Shown: piece by piece, positions 7,896 to 64,000 of the stretch | Numbering within the stretch: the stretch's first letter is position 1 | Layout: the number at the start of each line of letters is the position of its first letter | DNA from: Haliotis cracherodii | Lineage: Eukaryota | Length of the DNA: 64,000 bases | Direction of reading: 5' to 3' | Assembly (NCBI RefSeq): GCF_022045235.1 | Contig: NW_027266290.1 | Span: 2,542,001-2,606,000 of the forward strand | Notes under the pieces: generated by a model | Database searches by the model: none | Told to the model about the DNA's origin: nothing | The model's input: only the letters and a program-made list of their open reading frames with translations | Made by a program: the position numbers and the translations under genes

Positions 7896-8023
7896 NNNNN
7901 NNNNNNNNNNNNNNNNNNNNNNNNNNNNNNNNNNNNNNNNNNNNNNNNNNNNNNNNNNNNNNNNNNNNNNNNNNNNNNNNNNNNNNNNNNNNNNNNNNNN
8001 NNNNNNNNNNNNNNNNNNNNNNN
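7896..8023. other. Assembly gap
   Basis: Run of N. Confidence 0.99.
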
Positions 8024-24247: not shown

Positions 24248-24411
24248 AGGGGTGGTCAGGTAGCCTAGTGGTTAGAGCGTTCGCTCGTCACGCCGAAGGC
24301 CCGGGTTCGATTCCCGACATGGGTACAATGTGTGAAGCCAATTTCTGGTGTCCCCCGCCGTGATATTGCTGGAATATTGCTAAAAACATCGTAAAACCAT
24401 ACTCACTCACT
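24248..24411 (+). mobile_element. SINE family A copy
   Basis: Near-identical to the 6269 copy. Confidence 0.88.
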
Positions 24412-44274: not shown

Positions 44275-47200
44275 TGTTAATCTCAGATGTGATATATATA
44301 TCTGACTATGGTGTAAAACAACATTGTATTACTTACTCCAGTCGTTTAAGGTGCTTCGATTCGTTGTACAGAGTTGCGTCCCTTAGACTAGACAGGATCT
44401 GATGGTCGGGGTTTCAGTCCAAGAGTCGCCCTGATTATGGGGGAGCTGTGCAGATTTCCATAAAATTTAAATCAAACAGAGCTTTTTGCGCCTAAAAAGA
44501 ACTATAAGTTGTAGCAGGACTACTCGGAGTACATGGGGGTTTCTGCGTCCCAGGTTAGGTCTTATACCACTCGCCATACTCAACACACGTGGGACGCATG
44601 AAACCCCATGTATCCCGGGTGATCATGCTACGACGAATTGATCTTACCGATATGTTTTTAATATGATATTGTAAAATAATTCATACAAATTTAAAACTTG
44701 ATTTGAAGCGAGGTAAAAGTGATTTATTCTCCCGCTCTGAAATCCGCGGAAGCCTGACTTGTTCGTAGCGGGGTATAAGAGATTTATTCTATTAAGATCA
44801 CGTGAACCAATCAGATCTCATCATTCTGACATGGAGGTATGATAATAGAATGTGTGCTTTACAAAGAAATTGTTATCCCACATATGACATGTGTTAAATT
44901 TGACCCCTTTCAAAATGGCATTGTGTACTCATACCAAAATTAGTATAATGCCAGTCTATATATACATATCATAATTCTTAAGAAAGCGTCTACACAGAGA
45001 CCGAGATTCACCCATATTCAAGTCGCGAGTTGCACGATTCCCATGTGCAGAAAAAACCCTAAACAAATCAAAGTTTGTTTTGGCTTGACGGCCAGTGCTT
45101 GCGCGTAGATCAGTATTCCAACGTACCCTGTTTCAAACTTACAACTTTTGTGTAAATTAAAATCTTAGCTCCAGTACGTTTATGTTTCAGCGGAGTTGTA
45201 GACTGGAAGAACTGGTTCACTGTGTCCCAGTTTGTCAAGGACTATACGACTAGTATGCCAATTTCTAACGCTGATTTACTGCCTCAGCTACTATAGTAAA
45301 AACTGTAACTATTTTGTGTTATTATCGTTATCATGGTTATAGATGAAACATTACAATGTGAAATGAAAAGGCAAATATAGATCCTTGACTTGAACCTAAC
45401 CCTAAGGATCGTGTGAGGGCGTTTGATTGGGAAGGGGCACCAAACTCGTAAGGGTGCTGGATCAGAAAGGAGATGAAAGGGCTAATCTATCCTAACTGAT
45501 GGCTACTGGTCAAGTGCATCAAGGGAAACAATCGGGTTCTGATTCTGATGACAAGCACTAATTATTGGTGATAGCATCAAATTGAAAATCCAGTTTGACT
45601 GAATACTAGTCAAATCGGTGTCTGGGGTTTTGAGGTTATTAAGTAAAGAATAATGTTTGATTTTTTTTTTTTTAAATATAGAAAAAATAATGAAGGGACT
45701 AATAACCATATACTGCAAAGCCCCTTGGGATTCGGTACGGAAATAAACCCCCGGGCAAAAGAAAGTATACACTTGAAAATTGGATCTGACCAAACAATTA
45801 CAAACATTATCAAAACGTTACTAGGATGAAAACAGTCGCGGAATCACTGCAAACTTAATATCCCAAACATAACTGTGATACCCATATCAAATACATCACC
45901 ATCGTATACTCATTTCATGTTTGTTTCATTTCAATCACCATCAAACATAGGTGTATCCTTTCTGTTGCCAGGCAGTTTAGGCCACCAGCAACCAATGGTT
46001 GTCGGAAGAGGCTCTAAATGGGTCGGGGGGTTAGGCTCGCTGACTTGGTTGATTGCATGTCATCGTATTCCACTTGCGTGGATCTATGTGCATGTCAATC
46101 ACTGGATTGTCTGGTCCAGACTCGATTATTTTCAGACAGTCTTCATACAACTGGAATATCGTTGAATGCGGCGTTAAACAACAAACATACATAACACAGC
46201 GGTTTTTTTGTTTAAAATTCTTTTATTGGATTATCTTTGCATAATTGTGGATATTCTCATCCATACAAGAAAGTAATTGTGTTAAAAAAGTATTTAATCT
46301 GAAAACAGACATTTTGTACGGAACTTCTGGTAGGTAGTGAGGTGGTTCCTTGTCGCGGGATACTTGTGAGATGGCCCCTGGATTGTATGCGGTAGCGTTC
46401 ATGGCGACAACAGAAGGACATTTGTGGTTGTATCCCAGAGGCTTATCCAGATAGGTGGGGGAAAATCCCGACCCCTCCCCTTTAAAAATGCTGGATCCAC
46501 CCTTGGAATACAGGAACTACAGAAATAAAATTAGTACTTAAAATTTTAGGTAATACTGTCAGGAAATGAGATTCTGAATGGTGGGATAATACTATTCTGG
46601 GCAGTATATCACATTACACCTGTGGAACGATTCATCGAGCGATACGATAGTATCAGTAGGTTATACGTATCGATACAACACTAGTGCCAAATTCGCCGTA
46701 TTATACGTCCTGCTCCAGTTAGTAAATCTGTAAATAATCTTTGTAAGCGCACCCTACTAAGACCGAAAAGGTAATAACAGTCTGTATTTCATGAGTATAT
46801 TAGATATATTTACAGAACACGGAATCTTAGAAGGGCTTTATAATTACCTGGTTTTGAACTATTATAGAAACATTTTTAAGGTTTAATGACGTTTGAACTA
46901 AGATTTTTTCAATGCCGCTCTATCCCTGAATATAAATTTAACTCGTTTTTATGGTTTTAATAAGCGTCCCAGTTTGTCAAATTGCGGGCCAAGTGCTCTT
47001 ATTAAGGTGAATACGGCCAATATATGGTGGACATGTCAAATGGTATGAACATAAAGTATAAAATGTTATTTTCTGCTTGTAAGTAGAAGCGTCTCAAACG
47101 ACATTCTTAATTAATTGTCTCAAATCGACAATGTGTTGTTATCTGAGAGAGAAACAAATACACCACCCGAAACAATAACCGAAACATTACCTTTGTCTCC

Positions 47201-47399
47201 AACAGTCCCAGGCTTCCATTACCATCTACCTTGGGCCTAGGCGAGCTTATGAAAAATGAACAAAGGTTTAATTTGAAAGATAAACAGATTTAATTAGCGC
47301 AAGCACAAAACCAGAAGAGCCAAATATATTGTCCAAAAATGTCTAAAATGTAAAGAGCACTGTGATCTAAATAAGACAATGTCACCAGATGTCACTGAT

Positions 47400-48619
47400 T
47401 CAAGCGTCCATCTTGCGAGCACGGAACACACTCCTGAAGAAGCCGGTCACACGAGATCTGATGGTTCTCACGGTGGACTGGGGCTGTGTGACTTCCTCGT
47501 GGAGGTCAATCTCTTCGAAGTGGGAGGCATCGGGGAGGGTGGGGCTGGTGAGGGGCACGGAGGTGGACACGGGGGTAGGGGTGTGGGAGGCGGGCAATTC
47601 AGACAGGGGGTCAAGGATGGTGAAGTATCGGCACGTAGCACGCTGATAGGAAGGTGGAGAAGGATTTATAGACAGAGATAGAAAGTGGTGGACGTGTATG
47701 TTACAAGCAGCATTGGATGAGTGTTATGCTGTTAGAGAAATGTGAGAGGAAGACACAATGAACAGAACGGCCTGGTGTCACTAGCTATCGATAGTAGTTA
47801 TTACGTATGTCAAGAATACAAATCTCAGGCAAACATTGTGTTAAAAATACATGCACTTAGATTAAATAAAATAGTCAACAAACATGATGTTATTATTCCC
47901 GATTCAACCTACTTGGCGGGGAGGGGCCCAGATATCAAAGTTCAGGGGGAATCTGATGATCAGATCTACAGGTGCAACAGCAAAGAAGAAAGACATATAA
48001 AAAAGTTGGTTTTTTTAAATATCCGAAATTTAGCTTTCAAAACATGCTGTAAATAACGCCGTGAGTGGTGATTTAGTAATGTGTAAAAAATGGCGACATT
48101 TAAGATTTACCTAATTTTCAGAGGTCATTTTCAGTACATTTGCTTGGCCTAAAATGCCAGTGAAAGGTATCACAGAAAAGGGAATTTTCCCACATTATTC
48201 AAAACTGTGAAGTGTTTCTGTGTGTGTGATGTATTTTGAATTTTATTCGACTTCAAAGTGGGGGTTGAAGAGGAGGTACATATATGTCCCTCTGGCATTC
48301 AGGGGGTTAAATATTTGATCTTATTTGTTTTCAAAATTTCGCTTGCGAATACTTCGCGGATGATCACTAGCAGTTCTATGCATGGGAACGTTCAATGCTT
48401 TCATGAAACAAAGTCTGAGAAAACCAAAACGGCAACATCGCCAGCTCAAAAAACTACAAAACACAATCGAAATGTTATTGAAATTAAACAAATCTGTTCG
48501 AGTTGGGCTACTATGCATTGATTAAAACAAAGAAATAAGGGTGTAATGAGACGAAATGTTCGAACCAATGAGACCTAGATACCTTTATCGTACTGGTTCA
48601 TATTAGCGTAGGTAGACAT
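47400..48619 (-). CDS. Putative novel 110-aa protein, copy 1; exons 48619-48583, 47965-47913, 47642-47400
   Basis: ATG exon ending AAG|gtatct; pyrimidine tract+tag, exon 2, |gtaggt; long pyrimidine tract+cag, exon 3, TGA; phases 1 and 0 compatible; C-ending codon bias. Confidence 0.72.
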
Positions 48620-51051
48620 GATCCCAATACAACGTAGACAAGTGATGAATACTGAGTGTGACAAGTTCAGTGACAGCAATGGCGATGACCGTTTAGATCA
48701 AGAGTGAATCGTCGTCAAGGCGACGTCATGAATCTCGCGAGAAAGTAGTAGAATCTCGTAGCCGTCCAGATGAAACACTCTCAACCCTCTGAGCAGATGG
48801 AGATATCAAACCTGACACATGTCGCATTTCTGTACGAACACCAGCATTTATTACTCAAAATAAACTTTATACGACCCCCTTGTCAAAGGGGGGTTACTCT
48901 TATCCTGTGAGATCGCCGAATGAAGTTACGCCCCCTCGATGTTTCGCAAATGTTGAAAGAGTTTCGACCCCTCCCCTTTAAAAATGCTCCTAACTATTAT
49001 GATCGTAAGGGTGCTGGATCAGAAAGGGGATGAAAGGGCTAATCTATCCTAACTGATGGCTACTGCTCAAGCACATCAAGGGAAACAATCGGGTTCTGAT
49101 TCTGATAACAAGCACTAATTATTGGTGATAGCATCAAATTGAAAATCCAGTTTGATTGAATACTAGTCAAATCGGTGTCTGAAAAAAAAAAAAAAAAAAA
49201 TATAGAAAAAAAAATGAAGGGACTAATAACCATATACTGCAAAGCCCCTGGGGATTCGGTACGAAAATAAACCCCCGGGCAAAAGAAAGTATACACTTGA
49301 AAATTGGATCTGACCAAACAATTACAAACATTATCTAAACGTTACTAGGCTGAAAACAGTCGCGGAATCACTGCACACTTAATATCCCAAACATAACTGT
49401 TATACCCATATCAAATACATCACCATCGTATACTCATTTCATGTTTGTTTCATTTCAATCACCATCAAACATAGGTGTATCCTTTCTGTTGCCAGGCAGT
49501 TTAGTCCCCCAGCAACCAATGGTTGTCGGAAGAGGCTCTAAATGGATCAGGTGGTTAGGCTCGCTGACTTGTTGATTGCATGTCATCGTATTCCACTTTC
49601 GTGGATCTATGTGCATGTCAATCACTGTATTGTCTGGTCCAGACTCGATTATTTTCAGACAGTCTTCATACAACTGGAATATCGTTGAATGCGGCGTTAA
49701 ACAACAAACATACATAACACAGCGTTTTTTTTGTTTAAAATTCTTTTATTGGATTATCTTTGCATAATTGTGGATATTCTCATCCATACAAGAAAGTAAT
49801 TGTGTTTAAAAAGTATTTAATTTGAAAACAGACATTTTGTACGGAACTTCTGGTAGGTAGTGAGGTGGTTCCTTGTCGCGGGATACTTGTGAGATGGCCC
49901 CTGGATTGTATGCGGTAGCGTTCATGGCGACAACAGAAGGACATTTGTGGTTGTATCCCAGAGGCTGATTCGGGGGGTGGGGGAAAATCCCGACCCCTCC
50001 CCTTTAAAAATGCTGGATCCACCCTTGGAATACAGGAACTACAGAAATAAAATTAGTACTTAAAATTTTAGGTAATACTGTCAGGAAATGAGATTCTGAA
50101 TGGTGGGATAATACTTTTCTGGGCATTACGACTGTCACGTTACACCTGTGGAACGATTCTTCGACCGATACGATGGTATCAGTAGGTTATACGTATCGAT
50201 ACAACACAAGCGCCAAATTCGCCGTATTATACGTCCTGCTCCAGTTAGTAAATCTGTAAATAATCTTTGTAAGCGCACCCTACTAAGACCGAAAAGGTAA
50301 TAACAGTCTGTATTTCATGAGTATATTAGATATATTTACAGAACACGGAATCTTAGAAGGGCTATATAATTACCTGGTTTTGAACTATTATAGAAACATT
50401 TTTAAGGTTTAATGACGTTTGAGCTAAGATTTTTTCAAAGCCGCTCTATCCCTGAATATAAATTTAACTCGTTTTTATGGTTTTAATAAGCGTCCCAGTT
50501 TGTCAAATTGCGGGCCAAGTGCTCTTATGAATACGGCCAATATATGATGGACATGTCAAATGGTATGAACATAAAGTATAAAATGTTATTTTCTGCTTGT
50601 AAGTAGAAGCGTCTCAAACGACGTTCTTAATTAATTGTCTCAAATCGACTGAGTATGTTTCAGTTGGTTTATAATTCATTTAATATTTCTTTAACATGTC
50701 AAGTGTCAAATTTACATGTATGGTGTTGTGTCACATATCGCGACTTTACAATTTGACTTTACACGCTAGGTGTCCTGAATCAATGTGTTGTTATCTGAGA
50801 GAGAAACAAATACACCACCCGAAACAATAACCGAAACATTACCTTTGTCTCCAACAGTCCCAGGCTTCCATTACCGTCTACCTTGGGCCTAGGCGAGCTT
50901 ATGAAAAATGAACAAAGGTTTAATTTGAAAGATAAACAGATTTAATTAGCGCAAGCACAAAACCAGAAGAGCCAAATATATTGTCCAAAAATGTCTAAAA
51001 TGTAAAGAGCACTGTGATCTAAATAAGACAATGTCACCAGATGTCACTGAT

Positions 51052-52269
51052 TCAAGCGTCCATCTTGCGAGCACGGAACACACTCCTGAAGAAGCCGGTC
51101 ACACGAGATCTGATGGTTCTCACAGTGGACTGGGGCTGTGTGACTTCCTCGTGGAGGTCAATCTCTTCGAAGTGGGAGGCATCGGGGAGGGTGGGGCTGG
51201 TGAGGGACACGGAGGTGGACACGGGGGTAGGGGTGTGGGAGGCAGGCAATTCAGACAGGGGGTCAAGGATGGTGAAGTATCGGCACGTAGCACGCTGATA
51301 GGAAGGTGGAGAAGAATTGATAGACAGAGATAGAAAGAGTTGGACGTGTATGTTACAAGCAGCATTGGATGAGTGTTATGCTGTTAGAGAAATGTGAGAA
51401 GAAGACACAATGAACAGAACTGCCTGGTGTCACTAGCTATCGATAGTACTTATTACGTATGTCAAGAATACAAATCTCAGGCAAACATTGTGTTAAAAAT
51501 ACATGCACTTAGATGAAATAAAATAGTCAACAAACATGATGTTATTATTCCCGATTCAACCTACTTGGCGGGGAGGGGCCCAGATATCAAAGTTCAGGGG
51601 GAATCTGATGATCAGATCTACAGGTGCAACAGCAAAGAAGAAAGACATATAAAAAAGTTTGTTTTTTTAAATATCCGAAATTTAGCTTTCAAAACATGCT
51701 GTAAATAACGCCGTGAGTGGTGATTTAGTAATGTGTAAAAAATGGCGACATTTACGATTTACCTAATTTTCAGAGGTCATTTTCAGAACTTTTGCTTGGC
51801 CTAAAATGCCAGTGAAAGGTATCACAGAAAAGGGGATTTCCCACATTATTCATAACTGTGAAGTGTTTCTGTGTGTGTGATGTATTTTGAATTGTATTCG
51901 ACTTCAAAGTGGGGGTTGAAGAGGAGGGACATATATGTCCCTCTGGCATCCAGGGGGTTAAATATTTGATCTTATTTGTTTTCATAATTTCGCTCGCGAA
52001 TACTTCGCGGTGATCACTAGCAGTTCTATGCATGGGAACGTTCAATGCTTTCATGAAACAAAGCCTGAGAAAACCAAAACGGCAACATCGCCAGCTCAAA
52101 AAACTACAAAACACAATCGAAATGTTATCGAAATTAAACAAATCTGTTCGAGTTGGGCTACTATGCATTGATTAAAACAAAGAAATAAGGGTGTAATGAG
52201 ACGAAATGTCCGAACCAATGAGACCTAGATACCTTTATCGTACTGGTTCATATTAGCGTAGGTAGACAT
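51052..52269 (-). CDS. Putative novel 110-aa protein, copy 2; exons 52269-52233, 51617-51565, 51294-51052
   Basis: Same exon lengths and splice sites as copy 1; intact frame. Confidence 0.72.
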
Positions 52270-54702
52270 GATCCCAATACAACGTAGACAAGTGATGAAT
52301 ACTGAGTGTGACAAGTTCAGTGACAGCAATGGCGATGACCGTTTAGATCAAGAGTGAATCGTCGTCAAGGCGACGTCATGAATCTCGCGAGAAAGTAGTA
52401 GAATCTCGTAGCCGTCCAGATGAAACACTCTCAACCCTCTGAGCAGATGGAGATATCTAACCTGACCCATGTCGCATTTCTGTACGAACACCAGCATTTA
52501 TTACTCAAAATAAACTTTATACGACCCCCTTGTCAAAGGGGGGTTACTCTAATCCTGTGAGATCGCCGAATGAAGTTACGCCCCCTCGATGTTTCGCTAA
52601 TGTTGAAAGAGTTTCGACCCCTCCCCTTTAAAAATGCTCCTAACTCTTATGATCGTAAGGGTGCTGGATCAGAAAGGGGATGAAAGGGCTAATCTATCCT
52701 AACTGATGGCTACTGCTCAAAGCACATCAAGGGAAACAATCGGGTTCTGATTCTGATAACAAGCACTAATTACTGGTGATAGCATCAAATTGAAAATCCA
52801 GTTTGATTGAATACTAGTCAAATCGGTGTCTGAAAAAAAAAAAAAAATATATAGAAAAAAAAATGAAGAGACTAATAACCATATACTGCAAAGCCCCTGG
52901 GGATTCGGTACGAAAATAAACCCCCGGGCAAAAGAAAGTATACACTTGAAAATTGGATCTGACCAAACAATTACTAACATTATCAAAACGTTACTAGGCT
53001 GAAAACAGTCGCGGAATCACTGCAAACTTAAACCCATATCAAATACATCACCATCGTATACTCATTTCATGTTTGTTTCATTTCAATCACCATCAAACAT
53101 AGGTGTATCCTTTCTGTTGCCAGGCAGTTTAGGCCACCAGCAACCAATGGTTGTCGGAAGAGGCTCTAAATGGATCAGGTGGTTAGGCTCGCTGACTTGG
53201 TTGATTGCATGTCATCGTATTCCACTTGCGTGGATCTATGTGCATGTCAATCACTGGATTGTCTGGTCCAGACTCGATTATTTTCAGACAGTCTTCATAC
53301 AACTGGAATATCGTTGAATGCGGCGTTAAACAACAAACATACATAACACAGCGTTTTTTTTGTTTAAAATTCTTTTATTGGATTATCTTTGCATAATTGT
53401 GGATATTCTCACCCATACAAGAAAGTAATTGTGTTAAAAAAGTATTTAATCTGAAAACAGACATTTTGTACGGAACTTCTGGTAGGTAGTGAGGTGGTTC
53501 CTTGTCGCGGGATACTTGTGAGATGGCCCCTGGATTGTATGCGGTAGCGTTCATGGCGACAACAGAAGGACATTTGTGGTTGTATCCCAGAGGCTGATCC
53601 AGATAGGTGGGGGAAAATCCCGACCCCTCCCCTTTACAAATGCTGGATCCACCCTTGGAATACAGGAACTACATAAATAAAATAAGTACTTAAAATTTTA
53701 GGTAATACTGTCAGGAAATGAGATTCTGAATGGTGGGATAATACTTTTCTGGGCACTACGACTATCACGTTACACCTGTGGAACGATTCATCGAGCGATA
53801 GGATGGTATCAGTAGGTTATACGTATACGTATCGATACAACACTGGTGCCAAATTCGCCGTATTATACGTCCTGCTCCAGTTAGTAAATCTGTAGATAAT
53901 CTTTGTAAGCGCACCCTGCTACGTATACTAAGACCAAAAAGGTAATAACAGTCTGTATTTCATGAGTATATTAGATATATTTACAGAACACGGAATCTTA
54001 CAAGGGCTATATAAATACTTGGTTTTGAACTATTATAGAAACATTTTTAAGGTTTAATGACGTTTGAGCTAAGATTTTTTCAAAGCCACTCTATCCCTGA
54101 ATATAAATTTAACTCGTTTTTATGGTTTTAATAAGCGTCCCAGTTTGTCAAATTGCGGGCCAAGTGCTCTTATTGAGGCGAATACGGCCAATATATGGTG
54201 GACATGTCAAATGATATGAACATAAAGTATAAAATGTTATTTTCTGCTTGTAAGTAGAGGCGTCTCAAACGACGTTCTTGATTAATTGTCTCAAATCGAC
54301 TGAGTATGTTTCAGTTGGTCTATAATTCATTTAATATTTCTTTAACATGTCAAGTGTCGAATTTACATGTATGGTGTTGTGTCACATATCGCGACTTTAC
54401 AATTTGACTTTACACGCTAGGTGTCCTGAATCAATGTGTTGTTATCTGAGAGAGAAACAAATACACCACCCGAAACAATAACCGAAACATTACCTTTGTC
54501 TCCAACAGTCCCAGGCTTCCATTACCGTCTACCTTGGGCCTAGGCGAGCTTATGAAAAATGAACAAAGGTTTAATTTGAAAGATAAACAGATTTAATTAG
54601 CGCAAGCACAAAACCAGAAGAGCCAAATATATTGTCCAAAAATGTCTAAAATGTAAAGAGCACTGTGGTCTAAAAAAGACAATGTCACCAGATGTCACTG
54701 AT

Positions 54703-55921
54703 TCAAGCGTCCATCTTGCGAGCACGGAACACACTCCTGAAGAAGCCGGTCACACGAGATCTGATGGTTCTCACAGTGGACTGGGGCTGTGTGACTTCCT
54801 CGTGGAGGTCAATCTCTTCGAAGTGGGAGGCATCGGGGAGGGTGGGGCTGGTGAGGGACACGGAGGTGGACACGGGGGTAGGGGTGTGGGAGGCAGGCAG
54901 TTCAGACAGGGGGTCAAGGATGGTGAAGTATCGGCACGTAGCACGCTGATAGGAAGGTGGAGAAGGATTTATAGACAGAGATAGAAAGTGGTGGACGTGT
55001 ATGTTACAAGCAGCATTGGATGAGTGTTATGCTGTTAGAGAAATGTGAGAGGAAGACACAATGAACAGAACTGCCTGGTGTCACTAGCTATCGATAGTAC
55101 TTATTACGTATGTCAAGAATACAAATCTCAGGCAAACATTGTGTTAAAAATACATGCACTTAGATGAAATAAAATAGTCAACAAACATGATGTTATTATT
55201 CCCGATTCAACCTACTTGGCGGGGAGGGGCCCAGATATCAAAGTTCAGGGGGAATCTGATGATCAGATCTACAGGTGCAACAGCAAAGAAGAAAGACATA
55301 TAAAAAAGTTGTTTTTTAAATATCCGAAATTTAGCTTTCAAAACATGCTGTAAATAACGCCGTGAGTGGTGATTTAGTAATGTGGAAAACATGGCGACAT
55401 TTACGATTTACCTAATTTTCAGAGGTCATTTTCAGTACTTTTGCTTAGCCTAAAATGCCAGTGTAAGGTATCACAGAAAAGGGGATTTCCCACATTATTC
55501 AAAATTGTGAAGTGTTTCTGTGTGCGTGATGTATTTTGAATTTTATTCGACTTCAAAGTGGGGGTTGAAGAGGAGGGACATATACATGTCCCTCTGGCAT
55601 TCAGGGGGTTAAATATTTGATCTTATTTGTTTTCAAAATTTCGCTCGCGAATACTTCGCGGATGATCACTAGCAGTTCTATGCATGGGAACGTTCAATGC
55701 TTTCATGAAACAAAGTCTGAGAAAACCAAAACGGCAACAGCGCCAGCTCAAAAAACTACAAAACACAATCGAAATGGTATTGAAATTAAACAAACCTGTT
55801 CGAGTTGGGCTACTATGCATTGATTAAAACAAAGAAATAAGGGTGTAATGAGACGAAATGTCCGAACCAATGAGACCTAGATACCTTTATCGTACTGGTT
55901 CATATTAGCGTAGGTTGACAT
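54703..55921 (-). CDS. Putative novel 110-aa protein, copy 3; exons 55921-55885, 55268-55216, 54945-54703
   Basis: Intact; synonymous TCT>TCA and TTG>CTG changes. Confidence 0.72.
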
Positions 55922-57332
55922 GATCCCAATACAACGTAGACAAGTGATGAATACTGAGTGTGACAAGTTCAGTGACAGCAATGGCGATGACCGTTTAGAT
56001 CAAGAGTAAATCGTCGTCAAGGCGACGTCATGAATCTCGCGAGAAAATAGTAGAATCTCGTAGCCGCCCAGATGAAACACTCTCAACCCTCTGAGCAGAT
56101 AGAGATATCAAACCTGACACATGTCGCATTTATGTACGAACACCAGCATTTATTACTCAAAATAAACTTTATACGACCCCCTTGTCAAAGGGGGGTTACT
56201 CTAATCCTGTGAGATCGCCGAATGAAGTTACGCCCCTTCGATGTTTTGCAAATGTTGAAAGAGTGTCCACCCCTCCCCTTTAAAAATGCTGGATCCACCC
56301 TTGGAATACAGGAACTACATAAATAAAATTAGTACTTAAAATTTTAGGTAATACTGTCAGGAAATGAGATTCTGAATGGTGGGATAATACTTTTCTGGGC
56401 ACTACGACTATCACGTTACACCTGTGGAACGATTCTTCGAGCGATAGGATGGTTTCAGTAGTTATACGTATCGATACAACACAAGCGCCAAATTCGCCGT
56501 ACTATACGTCCTGCTCCAGTTAGTAAATCTGTAAATAATCTTTGTAAGCGCACCCTACTAAGACCGAAAAGGTAATAACAGTCTGTATTTCATGAGTATA
56601 TTAGATATATTTACAGAACACGGAATCTTAGAAGTGCTATATAATTACCTGGTTTTGAACTATTATAGAAACATTATTAAGGTTTAATGACGTTTGAGCT
56701 AAGATTTTTTCAAAGCCGCTCTATCCCTGAATATAAATTTAACTCGTTTTTATGGTTTTAATAAGCGTCCCAGTTTGTCAAATTGCCGGCCAAGTGGTCT
56801 TATTAAGGCGAATACGGCCATTATATGATGGACATGTCAAATGGTATGAACATAAAGTATAAAATGTTTTTTTCTGCTTGTAAGTAGAAGCGTCTCAAAC
56901 GACGTTCTTAATTAATTGTCTCAAATCGACTGAGTATATTTCAGTTGGTCTATAATTCACTTAATATTTCTTTAACATGTCAAGTGTCAAATTTACATGT
57001 ATGGTGTTGTGTCACATATCGCGACTTTACAATTTGACTTTACACGCTAGGTGTCCTGAATCAATGTGTTGTTATCTGAGAGAGAAACAAATACACCACC
57101 CGAAACAATAACCGAAACATTACCTTTGTCTCCAACAGTCCAAGGCTTCCATTACCGTCTACCTTGGGCCTAGGTGAGCTTATGAAAAATAAACAAAGTT
57201 TAATTGGAAAGATAAACAGATTTAATTAGCGCAAGCACAAAACCAGAAGAGCCAAATATATTGTCCAAAAAATGTCTAAAATGTAAAGAGCACTGTGATC
57301 TAAATAAGACAATGTCACCAGATGTCACTGAT

Positions 57333-58546
57333 TCAAGCGTCCATCTTGCGAGCACGGAACACACTCCTGAAGAAGCCGGTCACACGAGATCTGATGGTTC
57401 TCACAGTGGACTGGGGCTGTGTGACTTCCTCGTGGAGGTCAATCTCTTCGAAGTGGGAGGCATCGGGGAGGGTGGGGCTGGTGAGGGACACGGAGGTGGA
57501 CACGGAGTTAGGGGTGTGGGAGGCGGGCAGTTCAGACAGGGGGTCAAGGATGGTGAAGTATCGGCACGTAGCACGCTGATAGGAAGGTGGAGAAGTATTT
57601 ATAGACAGAGATAGAAAGTGGTGGACGTGTATGTTACAAGCAGCATTGGATGGGTGTTATGCTGTTAGAGAAATGTGAGAGGAAGACACAATGAACAGAA
57701 CGGCCTGGTGTCACTAGCTATCGATAGTAGTTATTACGTATGTCAAGAATACAAATCTCAGGCAAACATTGTGTTAAAAATACATGCACTTAGATGAAAT
57801 AAAATAGTCAACAAACATGATGTTATTATTCCCGATTCAACCTACTTGGCGGGGAGGGGCCCAGATATCAAAGTTCAGGGGGAATCTGATGATCAGATCT
57901 ACAGGTGCAACAGCAAAGAAGAAAGACATATAAAAAAAGTTGTTTTTTTAAATATCCGAAATTTAGCTTCAAAAAATGCTGTAAATAACGCAGTGAGTGG
58001 TCATTTAGTAATATGCAAAAAATGGCGACATTTACGATTTACCTAATTTTCAGAGGTCATTTTTAGTACTTTTGCTTGGCCTAAAATGCCAGTGAAAGGT
58101 ATCACAGAAAAGGGAATTTCCTACATTATTCAAAACTGTGAAGTGTTTATGTGTGTGTGATGTATTTTGAATTTTATTCGACTTCAAAGTGGGGGTTGAA
58201 GAGAAGGGACATATATGTCCCTCTGGCATTCAGGGGGTTATTTGATCTTATTTGTTTTCAAAATTTCGCTCGCGAATACTTCGCAGATGATCACTAGCAG
58301 TTCTATGCATGGGAACGTTCAATGCTTTCATGAAACAAAGCCTGAGAAAACCAAAACGGCAACATCGCCAGCTCAAAAACCTACAAAACACAATCGAAAT
58401 GTTATTGAAATTAAACAAATCTGTTCGAGTTGGGCTACTATGCATTGATTAAAACAAAGAAATAAGGGTGTAATGAGACGAAATGTCCGAACCAATGAGA
58501 CCTAGATACCTTTATCGTACTGGTTCATATTAGCGTAGGTAGACAT
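57333..58546 (-). CDS. Putative novel 110-aa protein, copy 4; exons 58546-58510, 57898-57846, 57575-57333
   Basis: Intact; TP>NS change in the Pro/Thr/Ser linker. Confidence 0.72.
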
Positions 58547-59946
58547 GATCCCAATACAACGTAGACAAGTGATGAATACTGAGTGTGACAAGTTCAGTGA
58601 CAGCAATGGCGATGACCGTTTAGATCAAGAGTGAATCGTCGTCAAGGCGACGTCATGAATCTCGCGAGAAAGTAGTAGAATCTCGTAGCCGCCCAGATGA
58701 AACACTCTCAACCCTCTGAGCAGATAGAGATATCAAACCTGACACATGTCGCATTTATGTACGAACACCAGCATTTATTACTCAAAATAAACTTTATACG
58801 ACCCCCTTGTCAAAGGGGGGTTACTCTAATCCTGTGAGATCGCCAAATGAAGTTACGCCCCCTCGATGTTTTGCAAATGTTGAAAGAGTGTCCACCCCTG
58901 CCCTTTAAAAATGGTGGATCCACCCTTGGAATACAGGAACTACATAAATAAAATTAGTACTTAAAATTTTAGGTAATACTGTCAGGAAATGAGATTCTGA
59001 ATGGTGGGATAATACTTTTCTGGGCACGTTACACCTGTGGAACGATTCTTCGAGCGATACGATTGTATCAGTAGGTTATACGTATCGATACAACACAAGT
59101 GCCAAATTCGCCGTATTATACGTCCTGCTCTAGTTAGTAAATCTGTAAATAATCTTTGTAAGCGCACCCTACTAAGACCGAAAAGGTAGTAACAGTCTGT
59201 ATTTCATGAGTATATTAGATATATTTACAGAACACGGAATCTTAGAAGGGCTATATAATTACCTGGATTTGAACTATTATAGAAACATTTTAAAGGTTTA
59301 ATGACGTTTGAGCTAAGATTTTTTCAATGCCGCTCTATCCCTGAATATAAATTTAACTCGTTTTTATGGTTTTAATAAGCGTCCCAGTTTGTCAAATTGC
59401 CGGCCAAGTGGTCTTATTAAGGCGAATACGGCCATTATATGATGGACATGTCAAATGGTATGAACATAAAGTATAAAATGTTATTTTCTGCTTGTAAGTA
59501 GAAGCGTTTCAAACGACGTTCTTAATTAATTGTCTCAAATCGACTGAGTATGTTTCAGTTGGTTTATAATTCATTTAATATTTCTTTAACATGTCAAGTG
59601 TCGAATTTACATGTATGGTGTTGTGTCTTATATCGCGACTTTACAATTTGACTTAACACGCTCGGTGTCCTGAATCAATGTGTTGTTATCTGAGAGAGAA
59701 ACAAATACACCACCCGAAACAATAACCGAAACATTACCTTTGTCTCCAACAGTCCAAGGCTTCCATTACCGTCTACCTTGGGCCTAGGCGAGCTTATGAA
59801 AAATGAACAAAGGTTTAATTTGAAAGATAAACAGATTTAATTAGCGCAAGCACAAAACCAGAAAAGCCACATATTTTGTCCAAAAATGTCTAAAATGTAG
59901 AGAGCACTGTGATCTAAATAAGACAATGTCACCAGATGTCACTGAT

Positions 59947-61167
59947 TCAAGCGTCCATCTTGCGAGCACGGAACACACTCCTGAAGAAGCCGGTCACACG
60001 AGATCTGATGGTTCTCACAGTGGACTGGGGCTGTGTGACTTCCTCGTGGAGGTCAATCTCTTCGAAGTGGGAGGCATCGGGGAGGGTGGGGCTGGTGAGG
60101 GACACGGAGGTGGACACGGGGGTAGGGGTGTGGGAGGCAGGCAGTTCAGACAGGGGGTCAAGGATGGTGAAGTATCGGCACGTAGCCCGCTGATAGGAAG
60201 GTGGAGAAGTATTTATAGACAGAGATAGAAAGTGGTGGACGTGTATGTTACAAGCAGCATTGGATGAGTGTTATGCTGTTAGAGAAATGTGAGAGGAAGA
60301 CACAATGAACAGAACGGCCTGGTGTCACTAGCTATCGATAGTAGTTATTACCTACCATGGTGTCAAGAATACAAATCTCAGGTAAAAGTTGTGTTAAAAA
60401 TACATGCACTTAGATGAAATAAAATAGTCAACAAACATGATGTTATTATTCCCGATTCAACCTACTTGGCGGGGAGGGGCCCAGATATCAAAGTTCAGGG
60501 GGAATCTGATGATCAGATCTACAGGTGCAACAGCAAAGAAGAAAGACATATAAAAAAGTTGGGTTTTTTAAATATCCGAAATTTAGCTTTCAAAACATGC
60601 TGTAAATAACGCAGTGAGTGGTCATTTAGTAATGTGTAAAAAATGGCGACATTTACGATTTACCTAATTTTCAGAGGTCATTTTCAGTACTTTTGCTTGG
60701 CCTAAAATGCCAGTGAAAGGTATCACAGAAAAGGGAATTTCCCACATTATTCAAAACTGTGAAGTGTTTCTGTGTGTGTGATGTATTTTGAATTTTATTC
60801 GACTTCAAAGTGGGGGTTGAAGAGGAGTGACATATATGTCCCTCTGGCATCCAGGGGGTTATTTGATCTTTTTTGTTTTCAAAATTTCGCTCGCGAATAC
60901 TTCGCGGATGATCACTAGCAGTTCTATGCATGGGAACGTTCAATGCTTTCATGAAACAAAGCCTGAGAAAACCAAAACGGCAACATCGCCAGCTCAAAAA
61001 CCTACAAAACACAATCGAAATGTTATTGAAACTAAACAAATCTGTTCGAGTTGGGCTACTATGCATTGATTAAAACAAAGAAATAAGGGTGTAATGAGAC
61101 GAAATGTCCGAACCAATGAGACCTAGATACCTTTATCGTACTGGTTCATATTAGCGTAGGTAGACAT
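59947..61167 (-). CDS. Putative novel 110-aa protein, copy 5; exons 61167-61131, 60518-60466, 60189-59947
   Basis: Intact; synonymous CGT>CGG; head-to-head with tRNase Z. Confidence 0.72.
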
Positions 61168-61280
61168 GATCCCAATACAACGTAGACAAGTGATGAATAC
61201 TGAGTGTGACAAGTTCAGTGACAGCAATGGTGATGACCGTTTAGATCAAGAGTGAATCGTCGTCAAGGCGACGTCATGAA

Positions 61281-61290
61281 TCTCGCGAGA
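61281..61290. promoter_or_regulatory. TCTCGCGAGA palindrome (BANP/ZBTB33-type promoter motif), next to a CRE-like catgacgtcg on the - strand; candidate bidirectional promoter
   Basis: Exact palindrome 114 bp upstream of the orphan ATG (-) and about 350 bp upstream of the tRNase Z ATG (+); repeated at 48733, 52383, 56035, 58660. Confidence 0.65.
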
Positions 61291-61640
61291 ATGTAGTAGA
61301 ATCTCGTAGCCGTCTAGATGAAACACTCTCAACCCTCTGAGCAGATGGAGATATCAAACCTGACACATGTCGCATTTCTGTACGAACACCAGCATTTATT
61401 ACTCAAAATAAACTTTATACGACCCCCTTGTCAAAGGGGGGTTACTCTATTCCTGTGAGATCGCCAAATAGAGTTACGCCCCCTCGATGTTTCGCAAAGT
61501 TGAAAGAGTCTCGTTGAAAGTCAATGAAATCGATTAGGTCTGTGATGCAATCATGTTACAAGGGTTTGTTCATTTCAACCTCCCGAACGGTAAGGTTGTC
61601 ATATTTTCCAGTGTGCCGGAGACACTTCATTAGAAGGAGA

Positions 61641-61807
61641 ATGGATGACATTCAGAAATGGATCCAGTGTGGACGATACCGGGTGTTCGCCTGGTCCATA
61701 GCAGGCATGGAGACGAGCGTTGTGGTGAAATCCAACGATCTGGAGGTGGCCTTTGACATGGGTTACTCATCTAGAGAGAGCATCAGGTGCAGAGATGTAT
61801 TCATCAG
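61641..61807 (+). CDS. Short-form tRNase Z (TM-type/plant TRZ1-like) metallo-beta-lactamase, first coding exon
   Basis: SIAGMET...VAFDMG resembles TRZ1 SIGGHET...IAFDIG; donor AG|gtaatc. Confidence 0.82.
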
Positions 61808-62283
61808 GTAATCCGGTAGTCAACTTTAGAGCGTCAGTTACAGGGATGTATTCATCAGGTAGTCAAATTGAGAGCATCAGGTGCAGAGATGTATTCATCA
61901 GGTAATCCGGTTGTCAACTTTAGAGCGTCAGTTACAGGGATGTATTCATCAGGTAGTCAAATTGAGAGCATCAGGTGCAGAGATGTATTCATCAGGTAAT
62001 CCGGTTGTCAACTTTAGAGCATCAGTTACAGGGATGTATTCATCAGGTAATCACCTTGGAAGCAACGGTTACAGGGATCTGTTAATCCGGTAGTCAACTT
62101 GAGAGCCAACTTCAGTTACATGGATGTATTCATCAAGTAGTCAAATTGAGAGCATCAGTTACAGGGATGTATTCATCAGGTAGTCAAATTGAGAGCGTCA
62201 GTTACAGGGATGTATTAATCCGAAAAAGTCAACTTGAGAGCATCAATTACAGGGATGTATTCATCAGGTAGTCAACTTGAGAG
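61776..62283. repeat. Minisatellite reiterating the tRNase Z exon 1/intron 1 junction
   Basis: agagcatcaggtgcagagatgtattcatcaggtaatccgg and agagc(g/a)tcagttacagggatgtattcatcaggtagtc units. Confidence 0.88.
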
Positions 62284-63104: not shown

Positions 63105-64000
63105 TTCCTGTATGTCTACATGTCTATATACTGGTGGAAACAGTTCCTGTATGTCTACATGTCTATATACTGGTGGGAAACAGTTCCTGTATGTCTACAT
63201 GTCTATATACTGGTGGGAAACAGTTCCTGTATGTCTACATGTCTATATACTGGTGGGAAACAGTTCCTGCATGTCTACATGTCTATATACTGGTGGGAAA
63301 CAGTTCCAGTATGTCTACATGTCTATATACTGGTTGGAAACAGTTCCTATATGTCTACATGTCTATATACTGGTTGGAAACAGTTCCTGTATGTCTACAT
63401 GTCTATATACTGGTGGGAAACAGTTCTTGTATGTCTGCATGTCTATATACTGGTGGGAAACAGTTCTTGTATGTCTACATGTCTATATACTGGTGGGAAA
63501 CAGTTCCTATATGTCTACATGTCTGTATATACTGGTGGGAAACAGTTCTTGTATGTCTACATGTCTATATACTGGTGGGAAACAGTTCTTGTATGTCTAC
63601 ATGTCTATATACTGGTGGGAAACAGTTCTTGTATGTCTACATGTCTATATACTGGTGGAAAACAGTTCCTATATGTCTACATGTCTATATACTGGTGGGA
63701 AACAGTTCCTGTATGTCTACCTGTCTATATACTGGTGGGAAACAGTTCCTGTATGTCTACATGTCTATATACTGGTGGGAAACAGTTCTTGTATGTCTAC
63801 ATGTCTATATACTGGTGGGAAACAGTTCCTGTATGTCTACATGTCTATATACTGGTGGAAAACAGTTCCTATATGTCTACATGTCTATATACTGGTTGGA
63901 AACAGTTCTTGTATGTCTACATGTCTATATACTGGTGGGAAACAGTTCCTGTATGTCTAGGTGTCTATATAATGGTGGGAAACAGTTCCAGTATGTCTAC
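63105..64000. repeat. 40-bp minisatellite running off the window end
   Basis: cagttcctgtatgtctacatgtctatatactggtgggaaa. Confidence 0.96.

What the first reader, a model, noticed from the sequence alone, without database searches (positions are those of the whole stretch)
47400..61167. Five tandem intact copies of a hidden three-exon orphan gene encoding a 110-aa protein
Seen: each array unit has, on the - strand, exons of 37, 53 and 243 nt with canonical sites (AAG|gtatct; tctttcttctttgctgttgcacctgtag|; CAA|gtaggt; ccttctccaccttcctatcag|). They splice in phase to MSTYANMNQYDKDLIIRFPLNFDIWAPPRQRATCRYFTILDPLSELPASHTPTPVSTSVPLTSPTLPDASHFEEIDLHEEVTQPQSTVRTIRSRVTGFFRSVFRARKMDA*. ATTAAA hexamers lie about 110-130 bp past the stop. 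The ORF track shows only fragments and antisense shadows. I recognise no protein family. Inference: a recently amplified, lineage-restricted small-protein gene between SNAP29 and tRNase Z.
Basis: partly seen in the sequence, partly recalled or inferred. Interest (0 to 1): 0.88.

Follow-up and report, generated by a model that had tools for sequence, protein, structure and literature searches.

The report
Annotated abalone-only small-protein gene array
The five tandem three-exon genes are real and under protein-level constraint. They are already in the public black abalone annotation as "uncharacterized protein", and they are one branch of an abalone-only family with over 100 loci for small, mostly disordered proteins of unknown function.

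Summary
Five minus-strand units each carry an intact 37+53+243 nt GT-AG spliced reading frame of 110 aa.

The "hidden orphan" reading is only partly right:
- The five products match Haliotis cracherodii RefSeq proteins XP_071115956, -57, -59, -60 and -62 letter for letter. H. rufescens has the same array, and H. asinina has a 109-aa orthologue.
- Two more intact copies lie about 150 kb away.
- The genome holds at least 100 paralogous last exons in tandem arrays on many chromosomes.
- A profile search of 1.84 billion proteins found credible relatives only in Haliotis, apart from one unnamed 503-nt ENA contig.

Protein-level constraint is clear:
- dN/dS is about 0.4 against paralogues at dS about 0.7.
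- Among the seven recent copies there are 9 synonymous and 4 replacement sites (p = 0.0005).
- The motifs and the C-terminal helix are constrained, and the linker between them evolves neutrally.

The product has no Pfam match and no signal peptide. AlphaFold2 predicts disorder plus one basic amphipathic C-terminal helix. Function is still unknown. My working guess is an intracellular adaptor that acts through short motifs.

Direct RNA support for this subfamily's own splice junctions was not obtained.

The scan has met this family before on other DNA of the same genome (s1-820429, s1-823180, s1-846669), with the same verdict.

The parts
45446..61513 (-). Whole tandem repeat. It runs: partial long spacer, then gene units 1-3 with long spacers (about 3.65 kb period), then units 4-5 with short spacers (about 2.62 kb period).
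   Evidence: Self-BLAST; repeat families.
47400..48619 (-). Copy 1 coding span. Exons 48583-48619, 47913-47965 and 47400-47642. The 110-aa product equals XP_071115957 (P0006).
51052..52269 (-). Copy 2 coding span. Exons 52233-52269, 51565-51617 and 51052-51294. The product equals P0003 (XP_071115959/60/62).
54703..55921 (-). Copy 3 coding span. Exons 55885-55921, 55216-55268 and 54703-54945. The product equals P0003.
57333..58546 (-). Copy 4 coding span. Exons 58510-58546, 57846-57898 and 57333-57575. The product equals P0001 (XP_071115956).
59947..61167 (-). Copy 5 coding span. Exons 61131-61167, 60466-60518 and 59947-60189. The product equals P0003.
48733..48742 (.). Palindromic TCTCGCGAGA element 114-123 nt upstream of the ATG, with a CRE-like TGACGTCG next to it. 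It recurs at 52383, 56035, 58660 and 61281, and nowhere else in the window.
   Evidence: It is also upstream of exon 1 in both distant copies, and about 128 nt upstream of the candidate exon 1 of one C3 paralogue (L009).
47267..47294 (-). Two ATTAAA hexamers, 106 and 128 nt past the stop of copy 1. They are conserved in all units.
47245..47245 (-). Alternative splice acceptor, 155 nt past the stop codon. One contig of run X5 joins it to the exon-1 donor at 48583.
   Evidence: table 5 (skips 1337, ends CT..AC).
48988..49993 (.). Block of dispersed repeats, about 1 kb, present only in the long spacers. It is not part of the gene.
   Evidence: the extreme contig depth at 49530-49767.

Best explanation
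These are five of seven near-identical, intact copies of a real protein-coding gene of black abalone (Haliotis cracherodii). The gene is already annotated in RefSeq as an uncharacterized 110-aa protein.

It is one subfamily of an abalone-restricted family with at least 100 loci per genome. Family members have three exons, encode 101-112 aa, and have multiplied by tandem duplication of units that carry gene plus promoter.

Shown here: exact identity to the public models, the paralogues and orthologue, conserved splice sites, and purifying selection focused on four short modules.

Inferred: the product has no signal peptide and is mostly disordered. I infer that it works inside the cell as a small adaptor built from short linear motifs. 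These are an N-terminal DL[IV]IRFPLNFDIWAPPRQ motif, RY[FM]TIL[DE]PLSELP, an acidic F-x-x-I-x-L strand-type motif, and a C-terminal basic amphipathic helix ending in K-M-D-A. The helix would dock on a membrane or on a protein partner. Array copy number would set the dose.

The identity part I hold at about 0.9 and the mechanism part at about 0.25. The confidence given is for the identity part.
For: - Structure and copies: all five copies are intact with GT-AG sites. Seven intact copies exist in total.
- Public annotation: the products match XP_071115956, -57, -59, -60 and -62 letter for letter. H. rufescens has the same proteins, and H. asinina has a 109-aa orthologue.
- Family size: 148 profile matches in the genome, and nearly all last-exon matches have no internal stop.
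- Conserved gene structure: paralogues keep exon 2, the CAG acceptor in front of exon 3 and in-frame indels.
- Selection against paralogues: dN/dS is 0.33-0.59 at dS 0.55-0.80, with a median of 0.43 over 151 pairs.
- Selection by region: omega is 0.17-0.27 in the motifs and helix, and 0.76-1.19 in the linker. Exon 2 shows 8 nucleotide changes for 1 residue change.
- Selection within the seven copies: 9 synonymous against 4 replacement sites, p = 0.0005, and all four replacements fall in the linker. Coding sequence has 8 of 333 variable columns against 96 of 1354 non-coding (p = 0.0008).
- Protein features: no Pfam match. AlphaFold2 gives pLDDT 60 with a single helix at residues 87-106. That helix has hydrophobic moment 0.64 and charge +5.
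- RNA: a contig of run X5 shows the exon 2-exon 3 junction at the homologous sites of a paralogue. Contigs in X1 and X5 end exactly at the exon-1 donor.
Against: - No contig shown carries this subfamily's own exon 1-2 or exon 2-3 junction. Several contigs read through the intron-2 acceptor.
- In run X5 the exon-1 donor joins an acceptor beyond the stop codon. The coding isoform may therefore be minor in those samples.
- The runs are only guessed to be RNA.
- No partner, localisation or phenotype is known.
- The one complex prediction gave no verdict.
- The motif readings (LIR, SIM, calmodulin-binding, PDZ ligand) come from my own knowledge of consensus patterns. They are not tests.
Confidence: 0.85

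Rival explanations
1. In most tissues the locus mainly makes non-coding or read-through RNA. Exon 1 splices past the coding exons to an acceptor at 47245, and the 110-aa protein is made rarely or only at a particular stage.
For: One search shows a GT..AG joint 48583>47245 in run X5 at depth 12.7, against 3.8 on exon 3. The bins at 47150-47268 are deeper than exon 3 in X1, X4 and X5. Contigs run unspliced across intron 2. Read in frame, that isoform stops after 6 codons.
Against: This rests on one contig in one run, with a 30-letter side. Contigs cannot measure expression. Strong codon-level constraint requires that the protein is made somewhere.
Confidence: 0.12
2. The open frame is a chance or decaying ORF. 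It looks intact only because the duplication is recent.
For: The copies differ by only about 1% in coding sequence, so within-array comparisons alone have little power.
Against: The frame, the splice sites and in-frame indels are kept in paralogues at dS about 0.7 and in H. asinina. There is an excess of synonymous change even among the seven copies.
Confidence: 0.02
3. The exons belong to a transposable element or a virus-derived repeat.
For: The sequence is multicopy and dispersed over many chromosomes. Dispersed repeats sit in intron 1 and in the long spacers.
Against: Copies occur as local tandem arrays with conserved intron positions. There is no transposase, reverse-transcriptase or other Pfam domain. 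The true dispersed repeats (6864 candidates) lie outside the exons. Exon 3 gave only 48 candidates, all of them family loci.
Confidence: 0.03
4. The protein is a precursor of a cationic amphipathic host-defence peptide. The acidic tract would mask the basic C-terminal helix until release.
For: An acidic block is followed by a +5 amphipathic helix. The family is a large lineage-specific tandem expansion, as is common for immune effectors.
Against: There is no signal peptide and no dibasic processing site before the helix. The helix is the most conserved part (omega 0.17-0.27), whereas effector peptides usually diversify. The N-terminal motifs are equally conserved.
Confidence: 0.07

Closest known systems
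RefSeq uncharacterized proteins XP_071115956-62 (Haliotis cracherodii) and LOC125371587, LOC124137811, LOC125371599, LOC125374441 (H. rufescens)
   Same: They match the window's spliced products letter for letter: copy 1 = P0006, copies 2, 3 and 5 = P0003, copy 4 = P0001. Length is the same (110 aa).
   Different: Nothing differs. These are the same genes. No function, domain or paper is attached to them.
Paralogous abalone 101-112 aa uncharacterized proteins (P0009-P0018, the P0023 cluster)
   Same: Three-exon layout, a nearly identical exon 2 peptide, the PLSELP motif, the acidic F-x-x-I-x-L motif, the basic C-terminal helix and the K-M-D-A end.
   Different: The window subfamily has a longer exon 1 (12 residues against about 6) and a shorter exon 2. 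It is 55-64% identical overall. It has its own H. asinina orthologue and sits on a small 3.4-Mb scaffold.
FITZAP/sp6, the abalone sperm acrosomal disordered anionic protein (PMC6952181)
   Same: It is abalone-restricted, small and intrinsically disordered, and it contains an aspartate run.
   Different: According to the paper, FITZAP has a signal peptide, two exons and an N-terminal poly-Asp region, and is processed to 3-4 kDa. The window protein has none of these features. No sequence comparison with FITZAP was made here.
LIR/SIM-type ubiquitin-like-modifier docking motifs, such as the F-V-E-I core of optineurin (from my own knowledge)
   Same: F72, I75 and L77 are invariant within an acidic, serine-flanked tract. 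Several subfamilies read F-V-E-I exactly.
   Different: Binding is untested. The single complex prediction with a GABARAP proxy gave no verdict. Such patterns are common in disordered proteins.

Membership tests
Abalone-restricted small-protein family (RefSeq 'uncharacterized protein', 101-112 aa) | Significant full-length sequence similarity to annotated members | tested here: met
   Exact identity to XP_071115956, -57, -59, -60 and -62. Profile E-values of 1e-30 to 1e-41 for family last-exon loci in the genome. Alignments A1 and A2.
Abalone-restricted small-protein family (RefSeq 'uncharacterized protein', 101-112 aa) | Conserved exon 2 / exon 3 structure with a phase-0 junction after ...PPRQ | tested here: met
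   Exon 2 followed by a GT donor, and a CAG acceptor in front of exon 3, in 15 of 17 paralogue loci examined.
Abalone-restricted small-protein family (RefSeq 'uncharacterized protein', 101-112 aa) | Restriction to Haliotis | tested here: met
   The profile search of 1.84 billion representatives gave only Haliotis proteins, one unnamed 503-nt ENA contig, and three long repetitive proteins whose scores are sums of 5-8 bit repeats. Other vetigastropod genomes could not be searched directly.
FITZAP/sp6 | Signal peptide, N-terminal poly-aspartate, two-exon gene | tested here: not met
   The N-terminus is not hydrophobic, the acidic tract is internal, and there are three exons. The FITZAP features are taken from PMC6952181.
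LIR-bearing Atg8-binding proteins | Core [W/F/Y]-x-x-[L/I/V] with acidic flanks | tested here: met
   F72-E-E-I75 preceded by D-A-S-H and followed by D-L-H-E-E. F72 is invariant across 22 family members and I75 is nearly invariant (at least 90%). This is a pattern match only.
LIR-bearing Atg8-binding proteins | Physical docking on an Atg8/GABARAP protein | tested here: inconclusive
   Complex prediction of P0001 residues 58-92 with GABARAP proxy P0151 gave no verdict.
Secreted cationic antimicrobial peptide precursors | N-terminal signal peptide and a processing site that releases the cationic peptide | tested here: not met
   There is no hydrophobic N-terminal segment and no dibasic site before residue 87. 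Judged by eye only, with no dedicated signal-peptide predictor.
Transposable element or provirus | An element-encoded enzyme domain, or exons embedded in a dispersed repeat | tested here: not met
   No Pfam domain. Exon 3 matches only family loci. The dispersed repeats lie in intron 1 and the spacers.
Any Pfam-A family or solved structure | Profile match above threshold | tested here: not met
   Zero Pfam families at E up to 10 (exon-3 peptides) and up to 1 (full-length proteins). The best PDB profile hit has E = 0.12. ESM Atlas hits are at most 0.80.

The most novel reading that the evidence does not exclude
The abalone family with over 100 loci is a new class of intracellular adaptors built from short linear motifs. 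Its invariant acidic F-x-x-I-x-L motif would dock on a ubiquitin-like modifier (Atg8/GABARAP or SUMO). Its basic amphipathic C-terminal helix would bind membranes or calmodulin. On this reading the tandem expansion reflects lineage-specific tuning of autophagy, stress or immune signalling.
Probability: 0.1. Interest if true: 0.6.

Novelty: already known. Interest (0 to 1): 0.3.

Why it matters
The existence and structure of the gene are already public, so there is no annotation gain. What remains interesting is the family. It has more than 100 tandemly amplified genes, is confined to abalone, and encodes a disordered protein whose four short modules are under clear purifying selection. It has no domain, no paper and no known function. 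It is a clean case for studying how taxonomically restricted, motif-based proteins arise and expand. The copy-number variation may also be relevant to abalone population genomics, since black abalone is an endangered species.

Tried and rejected
- Pfam on the exon-3 peptides and on full-length members: nothing.
- PDB profile search: nothing credible.
- ESM Atlas: scores at most 0.80, which is the range of shuffled proteins.
- Rfam on the whole window: one tRNA at 24254, unrelated to the finding.
- Profile search hits P0019 (Rhopilema), P0020 and P0022: rejected as artefacts of internal repeats, each stretch scoring only 5-8 bits.
- FITZAP/sp6: rejected on architecture.
- Complex prediction of residues 58-92 with a GABARAP proxy: no verdict, so it counts neither for nor against binding.
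- Paper searches for the LOC identifiers and for abalone orphan families: no paper on this family.
- Left-flank ORFs gave no SNAP29 signal in Pfam.
- The joined 110-aa model was not sent to any search as typed letters. Exon 3 was searched by reference. The identical database proteins (P0001 and others) were then used by id. Exons were joined only inside scripts, for translation and counting.
- The N runs at 7896-8023 and 41154-41333 were left alone.
Full report
**Observation**

The region is a tandem repeat. Start-to-start spacing is 3650-3652 nt three times and 2614-2630 nt twice. All five units keep the GTATCT and GTAGGT donors and the pyrimidine-rich TAG/CAG acceptors. Introns are 611-617 and 270-276 nt. 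Each unit gives a 333-nt frame of 110 codons plus a stop. Two ATTAAA hexamers lie 106 and 128 nt past the stop.

The repeat is a little larger than reported. It runs from 45446, where a partial spacer begins, to 61513. The long units equal the short ones plus about 1 kb at 48988-49993. That block is made of dispersed elements of about 240 nt, with 6864 first-look candidates in the genome. It lies in the spacer, not in the gene.

**Not hidden, and not a lone orphan**

I searched exon 3 by reference. This returned a 110-aa "uncharacterized protein" of Haliotis cracherodii and a 109-aa one of H. asinina. Cluster look-up showed seven RefSeq-named variants in H. cracherodii and H. rufescens.

The window's spliced products match the RefSeq proteins letter for letter:

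| Window copy | Database protein | RefSeq accession |
|---|---|---|
| 1 | P0006 | XP_071115957 |
| 2, 3 and 5 | P0003 | XP_071115959/60/62, also XP_048241312 of H. rufescens |
| 4 | P0001 | XP_071115956 |

The window is therefore black abalone. It lies on contig C27, which is 3,433,817 bases long, the same length as the scaffold recorded for those proteins. An independent annotation pipeline reached the same three-exon model.

Two further near-identical copies lie about 150 kb away on the opposite strand. Both are intact. One has its exon 1 about 2 kb upstream of exon 2.

**A large family**

The exon-3 DNA also matched more than 30 loci at about 70% identity on contigs C3, C80, C9, C7, C56 and C11, spaced 8-10 kb apart. 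A profile of 12 annotated members (alignment A1) gave 148 matches in this genome. About 100 of these are last exons, nearly all without stops, and they include more distant arrays on C3, C12 and C34. RefSeq lists these paralogues as 101-112 aa uncharacterized proteins in three Haliotis species.

The HMMER search of 1.84 billion representative proteins found only Haliotis proteins, one unnamed protein on a 503-nt ENA contig, and three long repetitive proteins. I reject those three because each repeat scores only 5-8 bits. The family has no Pfam match, no PDB relative and no credible ESM Atlas neighbour. I found no paper on it.

The scan has already met sister arrays of this family elsewhere in the same genome (s1-820429, s1-823180, s1-846669). 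The follow-up conclusions there agree with mine.

**It codes for protein**

- The paralogues keep exon 2, the CAG acceptor before exon 3, in-frame indels and the same stop position.
- For exon 3, the window copy against 15 paralogues gives dS 0.55-0.80, dN 0.25-0.33 and omega 0.33-0.59. The median omega over 151 pairs is 0.43, and 97% of pairs fall below 1.
- Constraint is modular. Omega is 0.19-0.26 for the RY[FM]TIL[DE]PLSELP motif, 0.22-0.27 for the acidic H-F-x-x-I-x-L block, and 0.17-0.27 for the C-terminal helix and end. It is 0.76-1.19 for the Pro/Ser/Thr linker.
- Exon 2 differs at 8-10 of 53 nucleotides between subfamilies but by a single residue in most paralogues.
- Among the seven recent copies there are 9 synonymous and 4 replacement variable sites, for 79 and 251 sites respectively (Fisher p = 0.0005). 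All four replacements fall in the linker.
- Coding columns vary three times less than introns and the downstream (3') flank: 8 of 333 against 96 of 1354 (p = 0.0008).

This confirms the companion note s1-848828.

**RNA evidence is thin for this subfamily**

The one read-laying run used Logan contigs of four runs that are only guessed to be RNA.

In favour of transcription and splicing:
- In run X5, unique intron 1 has no depth while exon 1 does.
- Contigs in X1 and X5 begin exactly at the exon-1 donor (48583).
- One X5 contig joins the exon-2 donor (47913) to exon 3 with 13 replaced letters. Those letters read H-R-P-G-R-Y, so this is the homologous junction of a C3-type paralogue.

Against:
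- No contig shown carries this subfamily's own two junctions.
- Contigs in all four runs read through the intron-2 acceptor.
- X5 has a GT..AG joint from the exon-1 donor to an acceptor at 47245, beyond the stop and both ATTAAA hexamers. Read in frame, that isoform stops after six codons.

I record this as unresolved and as the main rival, namely that a non-coding isoform dominates in some tissues.

**What the protein looks like**

The N-terminus is not a signal peptide, and I see no transmembrane segment (judged by eye). AlphaFold2 with the 22-sequence family alignment gives mean pLDDT 60 and pTM 0.22. It predicts no fold except one helix at residues 87-106. That helix is basic (+5) and amphipathic, with hydrophobic moment 0.64 against 0.33 for shuffles.

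Invariant or nearly invariant positions across distant subfamilies are P27-P28, P42-L43-S44, L46-P47, F72, I75, L77, R89, S93-R94, V102-F103 and the K-M-D-A carboxy end.

From my own knowledge of consensus motifs:
- The acidic F-x-x-I-x-L block resembles LIR or SIM strand-type docking motifs.
- The helix resembles membrane-binding or calmodulin-binding amphipathic helices.
- The conserved free C-terminus could be a terminal recognition motif.

These are leads, not tests. One complex prediction was run, using residues 58-92 and a GABARAP proxy fetched through an abalone GABARAP exon. It gave no verdict and is not used as evidence either way.

**How it most likely works**

Shown: unequal crossing-over has multiplied a unit that contains the gene and about 350 nt of upstream sequence. 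Each unit carries a TCTCGCGAGA palindrome with a CRE-like site 114-123 nt before the ATG. This palindrome occurs nowhere else in the window. It is also present at a similar distance upstream of the candidate exon 1 of one C3 paralogue (L009). It is therefore probably an old family promoter element rather than something borrowed from the neighbouring gene.

Inferred (probability about 0.25): the product is an intracellular disordered adaptor that acts through its four conserved modules, with array copy number setting the dose.

**Comparison with known things**

The genes themselves are known and annotated, with no function assigned. FITZAP/sp6, the other abalone-specific disordered protein, differs in every defining feature: signal peptide, two exons and N-terminal poly-Asp. 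The antimicrobial-precursor reading fails on the missing signal peptide and on the strong conservation of the helix. The transposable-element reading fails on conserved introns, tandem rather than dispersed copies, and the absence of any element domain.

**Context**

The right-hand neighbour has an exon with H-G-H-M-D-H and a sub-threshold Lactamase_B_2 match (E = 0.013). That fits tRNase Z but does not prove it. SNAP29 on the left was not verified.

**Limits**

- The joined model was never sent as typed letters. Exon 3 was searched by reference, and identical database proteins were used by id.
- N runs were left untouched.

**Verdict**

The genes are already known as annotation, and their function remains open. 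Interest is modest (0.3).

Noticed in passing
window 47245 and 48583 (minus strand): One contig of run X5 joins the exon-1 donor to an acceptor 155 nt past the stop codon, skipping exons 2 and 3. The bins at 47150-47268 are deeper than exon 3 in three runs. This may be a non-coding or read-through isoform of the array.
   Followed up: partly
window 48733-48742, 52383-52392, 56035-56044, 58660-58669, 61281-61290: A palindromic TCTCGCGAGA plus a CRE-like TGACGTCG lies upstream of every copy and nowhere else in the 64 kb. It is also upstream of the two distant copies and of one C3 paralogue (L009 position 415). This suggests a family promoter element rather than one borrowed from the tRNase Z-like neighbour.
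   Followed up: partly
G000:C27:2435333-2439937 (L006, L007, L031): Two more intact copies of the same gene lie on the opposite strand about 150 kb upstream. One has a 2-kb intron 1 in place of the usual 0.6 kb.
   Followed up: yes
window 49530-49767 and 47864-48339: These are dispersed repeats with very high contig depth (up to 1e5) in all four runs. The first lies in the long spacers and the second in intron 1. The element type was not identified, and Rfam found nothing there.
   Followed up: partly
window 61776-62283 and 63105-64000: Two minisatellites lie inside or next to the neighbouring metallo-beta-lactamase-fold gene. One has a period of about 43-94 nt. The other is a 40-nt unit repeated 22 times at 95% identity, and it runs off the window end.
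   Followed up: no
P0019 (Rhopilema esculentum, 2178 aa), residues 97-130 and six further repeats: Each 190-aa repeat of this jellyfish protein ends in a stretch that resembles the acidic tract plus basic helix of the abalone family (V-R-T-I-S-G-K-V-T-G-R-F-K-R-I-F-R). Each copy scores only about 7 bits, so it is probably chance similarity inflated by repetition.
   Followed up: partly
window 24254-24325 (+): A single tRNA gene just above the Rfam gathering score (31.5 bits).
   Followed up: no
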